In this document: positions 1,026-36,609 of the stretch, one piece after another | Position numbering within the stretch: the stretch's first letter is position 1 | Layout of the letters: each line of letters opens with the position of its first letter | Assembly: GCA_037379345.1 (NCBI GenBank) | Contig: CM074519.1 | Span: 16,036,742 to 16,100,741 of the forward strand | Source of the DNA: Perna viridis | Lineage: Eukaryota | Reading direction: 5' to 3' | DNA: 64,000 nucleotides | Notes under the pieces: model-generated | Told to the model about the DNA's origin: nothing | Database searches by the model: none | The model's input: the letters and a program-made list of their open reading frames with translations, nothing else | Position numbers and translations under genes: made by a program

Positions 1026-1456
1026 CCATATGAGCTACTTTCTGGTGGAGAAGCTGAAGTCGGACGATATCGGCACTCAAGCTGCTATCGGTTGGTAATG
1101 GTGGTGCTCCCCATCCATTAGGGTACGGGGGACAGAGGTGGCAGATCGATTGAAGTAAAATACAGAGAGTCCTGCTATCATATTGCTGTGACGATGTGTG
1201 TTTTTTGTTGACTGGGTATAGTAACTCCCATGTTTTGTCGTTGATGACGTCTGACGTGTGCAGACGTTGAAGCACCGCTTTGACGTGCGCCTGGGAAAGG
1301 TGATCTCTGAGATTCAGTGGTGGATGGACACTGTCAAAGGTGCTCCGAAGTGCAAATGTTCCGGCGTCCATGAGTAGCCATACTATCCTTGCCACGTTTT
1401 CTCGTTCTTTAGTAGCAATGTTCATTTTCTTGGCCCAATTCTGGTCCATATTAGCT
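1026..1456 (-). CDS. Internal coding exon encoding a DZIP3/hRUL138-like HEPN domain; the gene continues beyond the left edge of the window
   Basis: The translation ERENVARIVWLLMDAGTFALRSTFDSVHPP...W.LLYP...L.ILLQSICHLCPP..GW...P...D.SLSADIVRL.......H matches the recalled HEPN_DZIP3 pattern. Acceptor ttgcag|AGCTAATATG lies at 1457/1456 (phase 2) and donor ATGG|gtaag at 1026/1025. ORF-track residues after ...AHMG are intronic. Confidence 0.8.
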
Positions 1457-2229
1457 CTGCAATTGTATTGAAAATACTTTTAATTGAAATGCTAAATTGG
1501 ATTCAGCAAAAAAGCGGTAATAGCCAAATACACGTTCAACCCACTTAGGTCCATAACAGCTCTTTAAAAAAAAGGATTTAAATAAATCAAAAATAATTTC
1601 ATGGATAGTTATTAAGTTTGATTGAAAACATGAACATGTAGTTTCCTACCTCGTAATATAAAAAAACAGTTTTTAATTATTAATTAATCGTTTGGCTCGG
1701 CACGTGTCAAATACATACAATACAATAGTATCTAGTAACCATCACAATCTAAACAAAATAAAGCGTTTCAACAAATTCTAATTTTAGGTGAAATTTATAA
1801 AAAGGGATTTCGTCTCAATTTTACACGATTCTAACAATTCGGTTTTGATATACACCTGTAAAGGTACAGATTTTCAAGGAATTAAAGCCTAGTCAAGCAA
1901 CACCATAAAAGCTAGAAAAAATACAAAATCAAAAAAAAAAAAAATGAAACAAAAAAAAAATAAAAAACAAAACAAACACTACCGTACAGAAAACAACAAT
2001 ACATTTTGGGCAAAAACGCAGTGTTATGACGCAACATATTTGGATGGTGTCATTCTTAGGAATAACACACAGTGGTGAAGTAAAGATGATGAAACACGAA
2101 TGAGAAAAACACACACGTAATCATGTACTAATCGAACGAGAAATATTCAATATTTTAATTGTTTATCCTCTTCATTACCCCTTCAATGAAATGTTTTGTA
2201 AATTACTAAAAAACAAAAATGTACATTAC

Positions 2230-2240
2230 CCATTCGCCAT
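2230..2240 (-). CDS. Possible micro first coding exon MAN(G) within exon 2253-2230
   Basis: gttttag| acceptor, then ATG GCG AAT GG|gtaatg (phase-2 donor). A candidate upstream non-coding donor TTG|gtaagt lies near 2417. Confidence 0.3.
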
Positions 2241-3120
2241 TACTTATTTACTTCTAAAACATGCATAAAGCTTAAATTACATGAAATTTACATAAGGTTG
2301 ATGTAAGATGTAATTTTCCTGATTTGAACGAGATAAAAAAAATTCATATGAATTAATTCAGTGTAAAATATATCTTTAAATTAAAGATATGTTACTGCTT
2401 GTGTGGAGTAGACTTACCAAATATTTCATGTTTTATCCGTTTAAATGCATTTAACCACCGAAAAAATGTAAAGTTAAACTCCTAGTTTTTCACAATATCT
2501 AAGCTATCAGAGTTTAAATATATTTCACCACATAACCCATTCACTGCATGTATACAATAGTCAGTGATTCGTGACGAATGTTTGCAATATTCCCATTTGC
2601 CAGTAATTATTTTAGGTGTATATATACGTAAGTCATTTGTATTTTCATAAGTATTTAACTTTCTTTCCCGGGAATGGAATAATATTTGTTTAACGATGGT
2701 CACCATGGCAAACGTAACAAAGTGGTTATAAAACTGGAATTCTATCATAGAATTGAATTTAAAAAACATATTCTATTTTAAGTTTATTTTTTTTGTATAT
2801 TGGCAATCATTGATTAAAAACAGTTTTGATGGATTTGTTTTTCTATAATTGAATTGCCTCTCTTTAAAGAGAACATCATTTCAACTGAACTTCATACATC
2901 GATTCTGCTCTATAACTACTATTTTATGGTTCACTCGTTCGATGCATTTAAAATACATAATTCATATTGGAAACATCTTTTGTATCAATATGAAATAAAA
3001 TCATGGTTCCCGACATAAATTAAAATTGTGTTTTTTATATACATATCAAAGATACACTCCAATATTTTAATAATTTATTCATTTATTATATTTCCCTTTC
3101 AAAAGAAAAATACTGATTCT

Positions 3121-33184: not shown

Positions 33185-33360
33185 CTCGATGGTCCTAGGG
33201 TATCGTGCTCGCCTAAATTGCGGGAGGTCTTGGGTTTGATCCCGTATCGAGTCGCACCAAAGACTTAAAAACTCGGTATTTTCTTCCTTCTTCACCAAGC
33301 ACGCGATAATTCAGCAGATTAAGTGACGACTGGATACCTCGCAGTTAGAATGTGTCCATA
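33185..33360 (+). mobile_element. tRNA-derived SINE, degenerate
   Basis: A-box-like GGTCCTAGGGT and B-box-like GGTTTGATCCC, followed by ACCAAAGACTTAAAA...CCAAGCACGC as recalled for mollusc SINEs. Confidence 0.6.
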
Positions 33361-33954
33361 AAGGTCTTGATAAGGACCATCTATATAAGAACTAAATGAT
33401 AAGGACCATCTATATAGGTACCAAATTCAAAGAACTATTGAAGGATGTTGATTATTGAATGTCCACAAGCATGCAACTTACAGTATAAATGTCAATTCCT
33501 CGTTAAGTTTGTAGTACCCTATATCATGCATGATAAAGGAAACAAATACAAACAAACAAAAACAAAACACTCAGATCAATATATAAAATAGAAAATGCAC
33601 ATCTATAAAGATTTGAAATAAAATATAAGCATTTTAAATAAATAATATGTGAACGTTTCATTCAGTTCCATTCCTTGGTGTAGGAGGAGTGGAGGGTAAG
33701 AGTAGGGTACACTTCTGTGTAAGGGAAAGGCGGACGGGTGGACATCCCTTTTACATTATACCTCTACTTGTAGGGGTATTAATAACAAGTGTTAAACAAG
33801 AACATCATCTACATAATTGACAAATGTGATCGCTTAAAACAAATTGGATCGCCCAGAGATATGCTACCGTCCCTCGTCGCACTCTCAGACAAGTAAAGTT
33901 TTATACATTGGTTGATAAAAATGGTTTTAGGGAATTTAAGAAAATTTTACTTAC

Positions 33955-33983
33955 CCATGACGTTTGAAACCGTGCGACTTCAT
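33955..33983 (-). CDS. Short alternative first coding segment MKSHGFKRH(G) within exon 34020-33955
   Basis: Strong acceptor tttttatctttcag| at 34021/34020, in-frame stop before the ATG at 33983, and consensus donor GG|gtaagt (phase 2). A candidate upstream non-coding exon runs from ~35188 to 35099 (TCAGT start, GAG|gtaacc donor). Confidence 0.5.
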
Positions 33984-36609
33984 TATTTCTGACCACTATA
34001 AATCCAGCAAGATTTTTTTTCTGAAAGATAAAAATACAACTAAAGTCTTAAACTATCAGAAAATTAACTTCCATGGAACAAAAAAATAAAGTTCACAAAT
34101 AAAACAAGAAATTTTTATTGAACGTAAAATATTTATAGTATGAAAAAGCTAATTACATACTAACTGTGAGCGAAACCGGATTTCTTGAAACGACAAACAA
34201 GGGAGACAAACGTGTTCGAATCCGCGTTTTTGTTTAACCGTAACACTATGTACTATGTTTCCAGGGTGTATGACTGCACTGACCCTGAAATGTTTTTGAA
34301 CATACTCATATTAATCAAAAGAAAAAAATGCGTCTTCTTGCATTTCTGACAACCATATTCCGTAACAATCGTACCGTTAGAAAAAAGTGTTAATTCAACA
34401 AAGACCTCGATTTGAGACTATTTTTTTTTATTCTCTATAAAATATGTGCAGAAAGCGTTAAGTGCATTCTTTTTCCCAATTCAATTAGTTATATAGTGAA
34501 GGTAAAACGTGTTAAAATTTAAGTGATTAAAAGAGCTAGTGCGTACAGTCTGTCTTAAATTTACACGCAAGACAATGCTTGATATTCAATTTTCCTTAAA
34601 TATTTCAAAATTTGAGAACTTTAACTCGTTTCACCTAGGCTGTCTTGTAATTGACTATAAGGTGTTCTTGTAGTCTATGCAAAAGACAAAAGTGTAAAGC
34701 CCTTATAGTAGTATAAGCAGTTGCGGATCCAGAGATGTAGTAAAGAGGGAAGGAGGGGGTCCAGGTTATTGTTTTGTTGACTTCTGACAAAATTCTGCAA
34801 GATTTATACAAAAACACGTAATGAGTGTCCAAACCCAGTAACCTCTTGAACCGCTGCTGATAGTAAAAGGTACAAGCTCCGACAAATTTTAATAATGGCT
34901 GTACCTAGATGGACAGAAAGCGTTGTTTATTTGAAAGATGACCCATATTAGTTTTGCAGCACTGTATCTTAGTAATTCTAAACTTAAAAAAAAAACTGTA
35001 TGATTGTTATATATATGTACAGTGCTATACTAAAGAACTCTAATATATCAACAAGCATGTATTATGAAAAGAGATGAATCTTAAACTTTACTGGTTACCT
35101 CACGTTATTCCAAATATCGCTGTAAAGTTATGTTGACTTTTTTCCATGCTTACATCTTCTTATGCATTGCAGCAGGCATAGTAACACTGAAGTTTCAACT
35201 CTAAAACTTCAAGTTCAGAAGTAACACGCCTTTTAATTGGATAAAAAGTTCACCATCTCATAGACCAAATTTTGTTATGTAAATGTGACATCATAAACCG
35301 TGGCCTTTTTAATGATTTAATCTTAAAATTTAAAATTTGATACTAAAATGAAGTTATTAGAAATGCCGTATTTTTTTTCTGTCTACTTGAAATTATGCCC
35401 AAATGCCCGTGCTACGCAAGCTATTCAGTGTGACCACGTGCGACTATTCTTCATAGACAGAAAAAAAATATAACAATGAAATGTATACATGTACATACAA
35501 GCACGCTATCAAAAACTTGTCGACCTTTTCAACTATGGAAATGAATATCTTCCATTCCTCTCTCGTAAAGTTCAAGAAATGACAACAGTGGCGTGACTGT
35601 TGCATCCAGAAAAGCAGAGAACGTTGACAATACTAGTGAACCCGGGACTGAATGCATGTTAACAGTTTTCAGTATAGTGCAAGCGTTGTTTTTACTTAGG
35701 CACTTAGGCACCGACCATTTTTTATACCGAGGGGCTGGGATTTGCAATGTTGCTAAGTAATGTTTTTCTGCTCTTCTTAAAATTTTTTTTTTCAGTAGCA
35801 ATTGAATTATAATTTTTTTTCAGGAATACGGCGGGGTTTTTTTTTTTTTTTTTGCTAATCTAATTTACGATAAACAATAAATGTAATATTATGTAACTAT
35901 CAAGGGAAGATATATGAAAGTAAAGACTATGATAATCAGATATTGTATTCGTGTTATGACCAAATAAAATTAATTAATAGGTTTGCATCCCCTCCCGCTT
36001 CTAATTTTTTTTAAATGGGACAGGAATTTCAAAATCAGGATTTCTTTTCACTTCAGTTTCTTGTATTTAGGCACTATAATATACAAATCTTTCAATTCTT
36101 GGTGGCAAAAATAATGTTTCTTCTCTGAAACTGTTGTGGCTATGGATTTAGAACATGTCTATAGACCAAAAAGATAAATTTAGGCCAGCAAATATCTGGT
36201 AAGGAGTAAAAAATAAAAAGTAAAATCCTCCCAAACCCCCATATTTTTTGTGAGGGTTGGATGAAGTTTACTTGGCCTTAACAAGACATGGCTTTGTCTG
36301 AAGCCAAGAATTGATGAGGAGCTGCTTCTTTTTCTAAACCATACAGATCAAGAGAAAGTCTGGGACTCGTGCTCGCCGGGATTAGCTTCCCATGCGTTAG
36401 TACGAGAAAGTTTCGGACTTGCGGAGGGAAGCAGCCCACGTCGCAATTAACGATGCATGGCCAATCTAGAGTCAATAGCCCTTTAGCACCCCAAAATATA
36501 TCAATTAGGCAAAATGCAATCTATGAGTAAATTCATAATTGTATATTATATCTAATTAAAGTTGTTGCACACTTATATAGAAAATAAGGGGTGAGAGTGT
36601 TGAATTATG

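What the first reader, a model, noticed from the sequence alone, without database searches (positions are those of the whole stretch)
1026..35190. HEPN-domain gene with a cassette of phase-matched alternative first exons (variable N-terminus, constant HEPN body)
Seen: five ATG-initiated minus-strand segments (7286-7081, 26204-26065, 33983-33955, and the weaker 30373-30363 and 2240-2230) each end in a GT donor in phase 2. That is exactly the phase needed by the single acceptor at 1456. They encode unrelated leaders: basic 68 aa, acidic Pro-rich 46 aa, MKSHGFKRH, MPY and MAN. Several have in-frame upstream stops, so they cannot be chained as internal exons. Inference: a multi-promoter system resembling the variable/constant layout of UGT1A or plectin, which swaps targeting or regulatory leaders onto a HEPN protein. 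This would explain ~33 kb of apparently empty sequence. The two micro-exons could be chance matches.
Basis: partly seen in the sequence, partly recalled or inferred. Interest (0 to 1): 0.75.

Follow-up and report, generated by a model that had tools for sequence, protein, structure and literature searches.

The report
Bivalve immune-receptor gene with alternative first exons
This is the front end of a conserved bivalve NLR-type immune-receptor gene whose alternative first exons put different short tails in front of the same protein, a known kind of gene layout that related species' annotations already show.

Summary
The five segments exist exactly as described. The pattern alone is chance: 581 ATG-to-GT phase-2 pairs lie on that strand, against 619 and 598 in the other phases. 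Other evidence rescues part of it.

- **The gene:** exon 1456-1026 is exon 2 of a HEPN_DZIP3-CARD-NACHT-LRR gene.
- **Orthologues:** in mussels, oysters, scallops and clams they carry a basic leader, an acidic leader, a short leader or none ahead of the same junction.
- **Basic leader (7286/7268-7081):** 65% identical to the Mytilus edulis one (E 4e-27). RNA reads and a contig join 7081 to 1456.
- **Acidic leader (26204-26065):** collinear with mussel and scallop leaders.
- **Micro-exon 2240-2230:** resembles the Mytilus "MADG" leader (p about 0.01-0.08) but had no read depth.
- **33983-33955:** plausible but untested.
- **30373-30363:** no support.

The layout matches CIITA, not UGT1A. Verdict: interpretation largely right, ordinary in kind, moderately interesting.

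The parts
1026..1456 (-). Common exon 2: first 94 profile positions of the HEPN_DZIP3 domain. The acceptor AG is at 1458-1457. An internal start ATG sits at 1449-1447 (A at -3, G at +4). The donor follows 1026.
   Evidence: Pfam HEPN_DZIP3 E 1.1e-21. 91% identical to M. edulis P0169 residues 65-205. Stranded RNA depth in X21 and X22. Single copy in the genome.
7081..7286 (-). Coding part of the basic-leader first exon. It gives 68 aa from ATG 7286, or 62 aa from the conserved second ATG at 7268. The split codon AG+A reads Arg. RNA shows the exon running upstream at least to 7349.
   Evidence: Joint 1456/7081 (GT..AG on the minus strand): 7 reads from 6 starts in X21, 2 reads in X22, and one 1841-nt contig in X9. 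BLASTP to M. edulis isoform X2 gives E 4e-27 with 40/62 identical. tblastn hits come from 4 of 6 basic-class leaders. TGA in frame 11 codons upstream. Single copy.
26065..26204 (-). Coding part of the acidic, Pro-rich leader first exon (46 aa, net charge -8). The split codon CC+A reads Pro. The donor is GTAAGT, followed by T-rich low-complexity DNA.
   Evidence: BLASTP to M. edulis isoform X3 residues 1-43 gives E 8e-6. tblastn hits from three orthologue acidic leaders land only here. TGA in frame 2 codons upstream. The body is single copy. No RNA test was made in this animal.
2230..2240 (-). Candidate micro-leader exon, Met-Ala-Asn plus a split Gly codon. It resembles the 'MADG' leader of M. 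edulis isoforms X5 and X6.
   Evidence: The pattern ATGGCNRAYGGGT occurs once in 64 kb on both strands, against 0.04 expected. It is the only 1 of 27 eleven-nt candidates that matches MADG at 3 of 4 residues or better; 25 of 300 simulations gave such a match. Against it: zero stranded read depth at 2150-2349 in 4 runs.
33955..33983 (-). Candidate short basic leader (9 aa plus a split Gly). It lies in a 66-nt segment, 34020-33955, flanked by a strong acceptor (tttttatctttcag) and a strong donor (GTAAGT). It may therefore be an internal 5' exon behind a further upstream promoter.
   Evidence: Sequence context. CpG observed/expected for 33955-34390 is at the 99th percentile of the region. Single copy. 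Orthologues have short basic leaders of similar size (Saccostrea X3, Argopecten X4), but homology cannot be shown. No RNA test.
30363..30373 (-). Candidate micro-leader 'MPY'. Probably a chance match.
   Evidence: Strong donor only. No orthologue counterpart among 33 proteins. Upstream CpG observed/expected is at the 32nd percentile. Single copy. No RNA test.
11353..11484 (.). Assembly gap (N) inside the long intron between the acidic and basic first exons.
   Evidence: N run listed. No exon crosses it. Linkage of everything above 11484 to this gene rests on the scaffold join and on orthologue gene structure.

Best explanation
Window 1026-35190 (minus strand) is the 5' part of a single-copy bivalve NLR-type gene. 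The gene is conserved across bivalves and encodes HEPN_DZIP3, CARD, NACHT and LRR domains.

Transcription can start at several places. Each first exon has only a donor site, so it is spliced to the first available acceptor, at 1456, always with two bases of a split codon. Downstream first exons are skipped because they have no acceptor.

At least two first exons carry their own ATG:
- **Basic leader:** ATG at 7286 or 7268, ending at 7081.
- **Acidic, Pro-rich leader:** 26204-26065.

Transcripts whose first exon has no in-frame ATG start at the ATG at 1449, in the common exon. The result is one receptor body with a basic tail, an acidic tail, a very short tail or none.

**Shown:** the exon 2 identity, the 7081-to-1456 splice, the homology of the two long leaders, and a second, unidentified 5' exon in one run.

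**Inferred:** use of the acidic exon in this animal, separate promoters, and the idea that the leaders act as disordered tails carrying short binding or regulatory motifs rather than folded domains.
For: **Gene identity**
- Exon 2 matches HEPN_DZIP3 with E 1.1e-21.
- The downstream exons lie just before the window start: the HEPN C-terminal part (E 2.7e-6), CARD (5e-7) and NACHT (1.8e-8) with an LRR.

**Orthologue isoforms**. Among 33 orthologue proteins or isoforms:
- 6 have a basic-class leader, and 3 more share its C-terminal motif.
- 10 have an acidic leader.
- 7 have a leader of 1-15 aa.
- 6 start at the Met that aligns with 1449.
- 1 has an unrelated leader.
- 0 of 33 carry both a basic and an acidic leader.

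**Homology of the window leaders**
- Basic leader against M. edulis X2: E 4e-27.
- Acidic leader against M. edulis X3: E 8e-6.
- tblastn of 21 orthologue leaders against the whole 64-kb window: the 7 best hits (E 2.5e-26 to 9e-3) all fall on these two exons. Noise starts at E 0.24.

**RNA**
- The 1456/7081 joint with GT..AG ends appears in 7 reads from 6 starts (X21), 2 reads (X22) and a 1841-nt contig (X9).
- All of these lie on one strand of stranded libraries.
- The X6 contig of 4333 nt covers exon 2 and then runs on for 94 nt that the tool did not place in 1459-7349. In that run exon 2 has depth 23.2 and the basic exon 4.1.

**Other**
- In-frame stops lie upstream of every ATG.
- The leader of the M. 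edulis basic isoform is modelled without structure: pLDDT 27-31 over residues 1-70.
Against:
- The micro-exon at 2240 had no depth in 4 runs, at a gene depth of only about 3-7x and with about 19% of each raw run read.
- The letters of the 94 nt in the X6 contig were not shown. A divergent allele of the basic exon is not strictly excluded.
- Most orthologue isoforms are automatic RefSeq models.
- The structure model rests on 22 sequences, of which only 7 carry a basic-class leader. Low confidence there may reflect a thin alignment rather than disorder.
- No TSS data, so separate promoters are inferred.
- Linkage across the N gap was not tested.
Confidence: 0.85

Rival explanations
1. The alternative promoters matter only for when and where the gene is expressed. 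On this view the leader peptides are tolerated by-products without isoform-specific function.
For: - The leader is predicted unstructured.
- Leaderless isoforms exist in 6 of 33 orthologue proteins.
- Short leaders differ between species.
- The acidic leader is only 30% identical between this animal and M. edulis.
Against: - The open frame, start position, splice phase and charge class are kept from mussels to scallops and clams. Net charge is +2 to +11 in basic leaders and -6 to -16 in acidic ones.
- The basic leader is 65% identical to Mytilus where the NACHT-LRR exon is 75% identical.
- Motifs such as 'PSIPP.F' and 'KF.G.YE.EF' recur in oysters and pearl oyster.
Confidence: 0.25
2. In this species only the basic first exon (and perhaps a non-coding one) is used. 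The acidic exon would be a conserved but silent relic, and the three small candidates chance matches.
For: - The only junction seen is 7081 to 1456.
- Exon 2 depth and basic-exon depth are about equal in X21, X22 and X9.
- The pattern alone is at chance level.
Against: - The acidic exon keeps an intact 46-codon frame, a strong start context, a GTAAGT donor and the right phase.
- In X6 most exon-2 depth (23.2 against 4.1) comes from transcripts with another 5' exon.
- Orthologues in at least 5 species have both basic and acidic isoforms.
Confidence: 0.1
3. There is no cassette. The gene starts at the ATG at 1449 with at most a non-coding 5' exon, and all five leaders are chance ATG-to-GT matches. 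This was my own first reading.
For: - 581 phase-2 ATG-to-GT pairs occur by chance.
- Exon 2 has its own well-placed ATG.
- A paralogue on contig C3 starts with an ATG 4 nt after an acceptor-like site.
Against: - The spliced 7081-to-1456 junction is seen in RNA.
- Leader homology reaches E 4e-27 and 8e-6.
- The tblastn hits land specifically on the two exons.
Confidence: 0.01

Closest known systems
CIITA (mammalian NLR) with promoters pI, pIII and pIV
   Same: It is an NLR-family gene in which alternative promoters, each with its own exon 1, are spliced to a common exon 2. Two isoforms use their own AUG and gain N-terminal extensions of 101 and 24 aa. One isoform starts at an AUG in common exon 2 (passage read in PMC7866136). 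The layout here is the same: leaders of 62-68 aa, 46 aa and a few aa, or a start at 1449.
   Different: It is not an orthologue. CIITA has an acidic activation domain and acts in transcription. Its isoform I extension is CARD-like, whereas the leaders here match no Pfam family and are modelled as unstructured. The N-terminal domain here is HEPN_DZIP3 followed by CARD. Promoter specificity is not known here.
RefSeq isoform sets of the orthologous gene in Mytilus, Saccostrea, Mizuhopecten, Argopecten and Mercenaria
   Same: Same gene, with 75% identity to M. edulis over the NACHT-LRR exon. The junction is the same, and so are the leader classes: basic, acidic, 'MADG'-type short, and leaderless.
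   Different: Those are automatic annotations of other species. My searches found no paper describing the cassette. This window adds another species, the exon coordinates and one junction confirmed in RNA.
Plectin-type alternative first exons (recalled from general knowledge, not from a call)
   Same: Several short, mutually unrelated first coding exons are spliced to one common exon 2 and give isoform-specific N-terminal tails.
   Different: Unrelated protein. For plectin the tails are known to direct targeting; here that is only a hypothesis.
UGT1A and clustered protocadherin variable-exon arrays (recalled from general knowledge)
   Same: One donor per variable first exon, a single shared acceptor, and mutually exclusive use.
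   Different: In those arrays the variable exons are tandem paralogues, each encoding a whole folded domain. Here the leaders are 4-68 aa, unrelated to each other and not folded. The defining feature was tested and not met.
Bivalve HEPN_DZIP3-NACHT genes described in the pearl oyster genome paper (PMC9646362)
   Same: N-terminal DZIP3-like HEPN, then NACHT, then repeats. That paper reports more than 50 such genes in the pearl oyster (passages read). This genome has at least 63 HEPN_DZIP3 matches.
   Different: That paper stresses expanded, copy-variable arrays with an intact Rx4-6H motif (194 of 202). This gene is a conserved single-copy orthologue, and the motif is lost in it and in 11 of 11 orthologues. 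In the passages found for 'first exon' and 'isoform', the paper does not discuss first-exon isoforms.

Membership tests
Alternative-first-exon gene of the CIITA/plectin type | Two or more different 5' exons joined to the same acceptor of a common exon 2 | tested here: met
   The 7081-to-1456 joint is seen in 2 raw RNA runs and 1 contig. A second contig (X6, 4333 nt) joins exon 2 to 94 nt that the tool did not place in 1459-7349. The identity of that second exon is unknown; the acidic exon is inferred from homology.
Alternative-first-exon gene of the CIITA/plectin type | First exons carry their own in-frame start codons, so the isoforms differ at the N-terminus | tested here: met
   Each ATG has an in-frame stop upstream, and the phase fits the acceptor. 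The leaders align from residue 1 of the orthologue isoforms.
Alternative-first-exon gene of the CIITA/plectin type | The common exon holds a start codon used when the first exon is non-coding | tested here: inconclusive
   An ATG at 1449 sits in a good context, and 6 of 33 orthologue proteins start at the aligned Met. No such transcript was identified in this animal.
Alternative-first-exon gene of the CIITA/plectin type | Separate promoters and transcription start sites for each first exon | not testable with these tools
   No CAGE or 5' RACE data. The only hints are that the X9 contig runs 432 nt beyond 7349 and that CpG observed/expected is high at 7501-7900 and 33955-34390.
UGT1A/protocadherin-type variable-exon array | Variable first exons are paralogues of each other and each encodes a folded variable domain | tested here: not met
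   The leaders are unrelated in sequence and opposite in charge. They match no Pfam family. The basic leader of the orthologue is modelled as coil with pLDDT below 50.
NLR (NACHT-LRR receptor) | NACHT NTPase with P-loop, C-terminal leucine-rich repeats, N-terminal effector or adaptor domain | tested here: met
   NACHT E 1.8e-8 with the P-loop stretch GAGGSGKS, and an LRR_1 hit. The LRR_1 hit is below Pfam's cut-off (E 0.0027, 17.9 bits against 20.6), so the LRRs rest mainly on the orthologue model, which has alternating strand-helix repeats over about 876-1162. CARD E 5e-7.
HEPN_DZIP3 (PF18738) | Significant match to the family profile | tested here: met
   77.6 bits against a cut-off of 27 for exon 2, covering profile positions 2-94. 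27.7 bits for the next exon, covering positions 100-144.
HEPN_DZIP3 (PF18738) | Rx4-6H motif, the putative RNase site | tested here: not met
   At the aligned column, 77 of 118 family representatives have Rx4-6H and 101 of 118 have Arg. This gene and 11 of 11 orthologues have His, Phe or Tyr instead of Arg.

The most novel reading that the evidence does not exclude
The basic and acidic leaders are an ancient pair of oppositely charged, disordered N-terminal tails, shared by mussels, oysters, scallops and clams. Chosen through promoter use, they would switch the partners, localisation or activation threshold of an NLR whose highly conserved HEPN domain (91% identical to Mytilus) has lost its RNase motif. 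That would be an isoform switch built into an invertebrate innate immune receptor.
Probability: 0.3. Interest if true: 0.65.

Novelty: new member of a known kind. Interest (0 to 1): 0.4.

Why it matters
Invertebrate NLR-like receptors are mostly known as domain lists from genome surveys, and almost nothing is known about how single receptors are regulated.

This gene is a rare conserved, single-copy member of an otherwise fast-expanding family. It keeps two or more alternative N-terminal tails across deeply diverged bivalve groups. That gives a concrete, testable handle: the same receptor body with a basic tail, an acidic tail or none.

It also shows that a first-exon cassette can be called correctly from raw sequence only when orthologue or RNA evidence is added. 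The ATG-to-GT-in-phase pattern by itself occurs hundreds of times by chance.

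Tried and rejected
**Readings and leads that went nowhere**

- **My first reading (about 70%)** was that all five leaders were chance matches and the gene simply started at ATG 1449. The chance count supported that. Orthologue leaders and the RNA joint overturned it.
- **Repeat content of the candidate exons.** The 7286, 33983 and 30373 regions are single copy. Only the T-rich stretch just after the 26065 donor is repeated, with 56 other matches, all confined to about query 237-323. 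So none of the exons is a transposon piece.
- **This animal's own transcript-derived proteins.** I looked for them in the protein collection to see its leaders. The NACHT-LRR exon found only two genomic-looking ORFs, P0001 and P0212. Region 1-190 of P0002 and the first 393 residues of P0169 found none from this species.
- **Short leaders** (9-15 aa) of oyster, scallop and clam gave no meaningful tblastn hit in the window. They are too short to test.
- **CpG observed/expected as a promoter hint** is weakly informative in this genome, with a median of 0.86. I use it only as a hint.
- **Pfam on the repeated intronic ORF family and on the 884-aa ORF at 60842-63496** found nothing.
- **Earlier findings of the scan.** Nothing lay near this place, and nothing matched the combined words. 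The ten HEPN notes elsewhere in the genome do not concern this gene.
- **Supplements are closed.** Supplementary Tables S18-S19 of PMC9646362 list the HEPN-NACHT genes and might bear on whether the orthologue was noticed there.

Full report
**What is in the sequence.**
- Their lengths are 206, 140, 29, 11 and 11 nt. Each begins with ATG, leaves two bases of a split codon and is followed by GT.
- The acceptor (ttgcag|A) lies at 1457/1456, and the exon 1456-1026 (431 nt) needs two bases to complete its first codon.
- Every one of the five ATGs has an in-frame stop 2 to 18 codons upstream.
- The window has two N runs, 11353-11484 and 42015-42143. The first lies inside the finding.

**Is the pattern more than chance? 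Not by itself**.
- On the minus strand of 1457-35190 I counted 581 open ATG-to-GT pairs in phase 2 (450 distinct donors).
- The other two phases hold 619 and 598, and the plus strand holds 610-643.
- With a GTRAG donor there are 13 pairs in phase 2, against 7 and 16 in the other phases and 6, 7 and 22 on the plus strand.

My working reading at that point was that the gene simply starts at the ATG at 1449, seven bases into the exon.

**What the constant part is.**
- Exon 1456-1026 matches Pfam HEPN_DZIP3 (E 1.1e-21, profile positions 2-94 of 144).
- The window is G000:C9:16036742-16100741, so I fetched the 20 kb before it. On the same strand, in locus L002, lie:
  - the rest of the HEPN domain (L002 about 9969-9713, preceded by ttttccag; E 2.7e-6, positions 100-144);
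  - a CARD exon (E 5e-7);
  - a 740-codon open frame with NACHT (E 1.8e-8) and a weak LRR_1 hit that falls below Pfam's cut-off.
- The gene is therefore a HEPN-CARD-NACHT-LRR receptor, not a bare HEPN protein.
- The genome holds at least 63 HEPN_DZIP3 matches among 111 candidates. This exon has only one weak paralogue, at 32% identity.

**Orthologues change the picture.**
- Searching with the NACHT-LRR exon alone found full-length orthologues: Mytilus edulis at 75% identity, Saccostrea, Mizuhopecten, Ylistrum and Pinctada.
- A search with the N-terminal region of the Mytilus protein added Argopecten, Mercenaria, Potamilus, Dreissena and Solemya.
- Cluster look-up listed many named isoforms. 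I fetched the sequences of these and of the search hits.
- I cut each protein at the Met that aligns with our ATG 1449. The 33 proteins then fall into classes:
  - 6 have a basic-class leader of 53-64 aa, and 3 more (Potamilus, Dreissena, Mercenaria X1) share only its C-terminal motif;
  - 10 have an acidic leader of 35-66 aa;
  - 7 have a leader of 1-15 aa, including 'MADG' in M. edulis X5 and X6;
  - 6 start at the aligned Met;
  - 1 has an unrelated leader.
- None of the 33 carries both a basic and an acidic leader.
- At least five species have both a basic and an acidic isoform: M. edulis, M. galloprovincialis, Saccostrea cucullata, Mizuhopecten and Argopecten.
- Some acidic-leader proteins are open frames of single assembled Logan contigs, too short to hold this multi-intron gene unspliced, rather than gene models (P0003 from a 4115-nt contig; P0005 from contigs up to 4435 nt).

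**The two long window leaders are homologous to these.**
- The 7286-7081 translation matches residues 1-61 of M. edulis isoform X2 with 40 of 62 identical (E 4e-27). The match starts at the window's second ATG, at 7268.
- The 26204-26065 translation is collinear with residues 1-43 of M. edulis X3 (E 8e-6).
- I ran tblastn with 21 orthologue leaders against the whole 64-kb window. The seven best hits (E 2.5e-26 to 9e-3) all fall on these two exons, and the next hit has E 0.24.
- Charge class is kept. Net charge is +2 to +11 in basic leaders (window +6 or +7) and -6 to -16 in acidic ones (window -8).
- For scale, identity to M. edulis is 91% for exon 2, 75% for the NACHT-LRR exon, 65% for the basic leader and 30% for the acidic leader.

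**RNA evidence in this animal.**
- Runs holding exon 2 were found: 20 of 24 listed rows hold it, and X21-X24 are raw RNA reads.
- Reads were laid on window 1350-7349, chosen to include the acceptor, the 2240 micro-exon and the 7286 exon.
- The joint 1456/7081 skips 5624 nt with ends CT..AC, which is GT..AG on the minus strand. It is shown by:
  - 7 reads from 6 starts in X21;
  - 2 reads from 2 starts in X22;
  - a 1841-nt contig in X9, which also runs 432 nt beyond 7349.
- Depth on exon 2 and on the basic exon lies on one strand only in the stranded libraries. The two depths are about equal in X21, X22 and X9.
- In X6 a 4333-nt contig (depth 23.2) covers exon 2 and then continues for 94 nt that the tool did not place anywhere in 1459-7349. 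The basic exon there has depth 4.1. So another 5' exon dominates in that run. Its letters were not shown, and I could not identify it.
- About 19% of each raw run was read, and gene depth was only about 3-7x.
- Exon 2 and the basic exon are single copy. The spliced contig is therefore not a processed copy present in the assembly.

**The three small candidates.**
- **2240-2230.** It reads Met-Ala-Asn with a split Gly codon, and M. edulis X5 and X6 begin 'MADG' before the same junction.
  - The pattern ATGGCNRAYGGGT occurs once in the window on both strands, against 0.04 expected (4 of 100 shuffles).
  - Of 27 eleven-nt candidates on this strand, it alone matches MADG at 3 of 4 residues or better. 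None of 81 control candidates does.
  - 25 of 300 simulated sequences contain such a match.
  - So p lies somewhere between about 0.01 and 0.08, and the pattern was defined after seeing both sequences.
  - Read depth at 2150-2349 was zero on the gene's strand in all four runs.
- **33983-33955.** It sits in a 66-nt segment with a strong acceptor 37 nt upstream of the ATG and a GTAAGT donor. CpG-rich DNA lies upstream, at the 99th percentile of the region. This looks like a real, possibly internal, 5' exon. Its peptide cannot be matched to the short basic leaders of Saccostrea X3 or Argopecten X4, and no reads were laid on it.
- **30373-30363.** It has only a good donor.

**The gap.**
- 11353-11484 lies 4 kb upstream of the basic exon and 14.6 kb downstream of the acidic exon's donor, inside intron. 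No exon or frame crosses it, and the RNA joint lies wholly on the near side.
- Linkage of everything beyond the gap to this gene rests on the scaffold. It is also supported by the fact that orthologues carry both leaders in one gene.

**How it most likely works.**
- A first exon has a donor but no acceptor. Whichever start fires, its donor is joined to the first acceptor, at 1456, and downstream first exons are skipped.
- This explains why no isoform has two leaders, and why the upstream stops do not matter.
- The split codon always takes its third base from exon 2. The orthologue junction residues are consistent with that: Arg, Gln and Gly in Mytilus; Met, Arg and Pro in Saccostrea.
- An AlphaFold model of the M. 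edulis basic isoform was built from 22 aligned orthologues (mean pLDDT 79, pTM 0.62). Residues 1-76 have pLDDT below 50 and no secondary structure, and the first helix starts at residue 67.
- I infer that the leaders are disordered tails carrying short motifs such as 'PSIPP.F' and 'KF.G.YE.EF'. With only 7 basic-class leaders in the alignment, this is weak evidence.
- The different ratio of 5' exons in X6 compared with X9, X21 and X22 fits sample-specific promoter use.

**A side result.** The putative RNase motif of HEPN is absent.
- At the aligned column, 77 of 118 family representatives have Rx4-6H and 101 of 118 have Arg.
- This gene and 11 of 11 orthologues have His, Phe or Tyr there.
- Yet this is the most conserved part of the protein. 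A conserved non-catalytic role is likely.

**Comparison with what is known.**
- **CIITA** is the closest analogue. Three promoters with their own exons 1 give N-terminal extensions of 101 and 24 aa, or a start at an AUG in common exon 2 (passage read in PMC7866136).
- **Plectin** is similar in layout (recalled, not from a call).
- **UGT1A and protocadherin arrays** share the single acceptor, but their variable exons are paralogous domain exons. That is not the case here.
- **HEPN_DZIP3-NACHT genes of bivalves** are described for the pearl oyster (passages read in PMC9646362).
- **Literature searches.** I ran four full-text searches: HEPN/NACHT/bivalve; alternative first exons/NLR/mollusc; alternative first exon or promoter with oyster, mussel or scallop; and DZIP3/HEPN/CARD/NACHT/LRR. 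I saw listings only, apart from the two papers above. None of the listed titles or abstracts concerns this cassette. It exists in print, as far as I could see, only as automatic RefSeq isoform names.

**Verdict.**
- One junction is shown directly in RNA.
- One more leader is strongly supported by homology and one weakly.
- One is plausible and one is probably chance.

In kind it is an ordinary alternative-promoter gene and is already implicit in related annotations. The deep conservation of an acidic and a basic tail on a conserved invertebrate NLR with a degenerate HEPN gives it moderate interest.

Noticed in passing
window 1026-1050 (end of exon 2), and orthologues P0169, P0007, P0011 and others: The HEPN Rx4-6H motif is lost in this gene and in 11 of 11 orthologues, with His, Phe or Tyr in place of Arg. 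It is present in 77 of 118 family representatives. The domain is nonetheless 91% identical to Mytilus.
   Followed up: yes
window 2950-3549, 4750-4949, 5750-5949: These intron stretches have very high depth on both strands in RNA reads and contigs (word depth up to about 60,000), with many internal joints. They look like high-copy, transcribed repeats.
   Followed up: no
window 7117, 7145, 7215, 7254: Four polymorphisms appear in RNA reads and the X9 contig inside the basic-leader exon. Two are non-synonymous (Ile57Thr, Ile48Val) and two synonymous. The Thr57 allele matches the M. edulis residue.
   Followed up: partly
window 7268 versus 7286: The M. edulis basic isoform starts at the Met that aligns with the window's second ATG (7268, A at -3), not the first (7286). 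The leader is therefore more likely 62 aa than 68 aa.
   Followed up: partly
window 23719-24219; also 29241-29480 and 20210-20445: Tandem repeats: a 54-nt unit x 9.3 copies (89% matches), which produces a spurious 167-aa ORF; a 17-nt unit x 13.8; and inverted 21-nt arrays.
   Followed up: no
window 28473-28880 (-); L002 2868-3532 (+) and 9029-9259 (-); L003 6606-7229 (-): A dispersed family of related ORFs sharing long identical stretches, such as '...YLDLHLEIDGKGKLLTKLYDK...'. The two long copies tested have no Pfam match. Probably a piece of a mobile element.
   Followed up: partly
window 60842-63496 (+): An 884-aa open reading frame with a basic, coiled N-terminal part and no Pfam match. 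It is unrelated to the finding.
   Followed up: partly
L005 1899-1925 (G000:C3, paralogue): The nearest paralogue (a HEPN_DZIP3 ORF of 352 aa) also has an acceptor-like ttttcag 4 nt before its ATG, with the same phase. A 5' intron just before the start codon may be a family trait.
   Followed up: no
orthologue proteins P0002/P0180 and P0176/P0181 (Mytilus): Mytilus isoforms also differ by a 5-residue insert (GVYIP) between CARD and NACHT. This is a second, independent alternative splice in the gene. I did not examine it in this window's gene.
   Followed up: no
window 26064-25985: The intron just after the acidic exon's donor is T-rich low-complexity DNA, with at least 56 similar stretches elsewhere in the genome.
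   Followed up: partly
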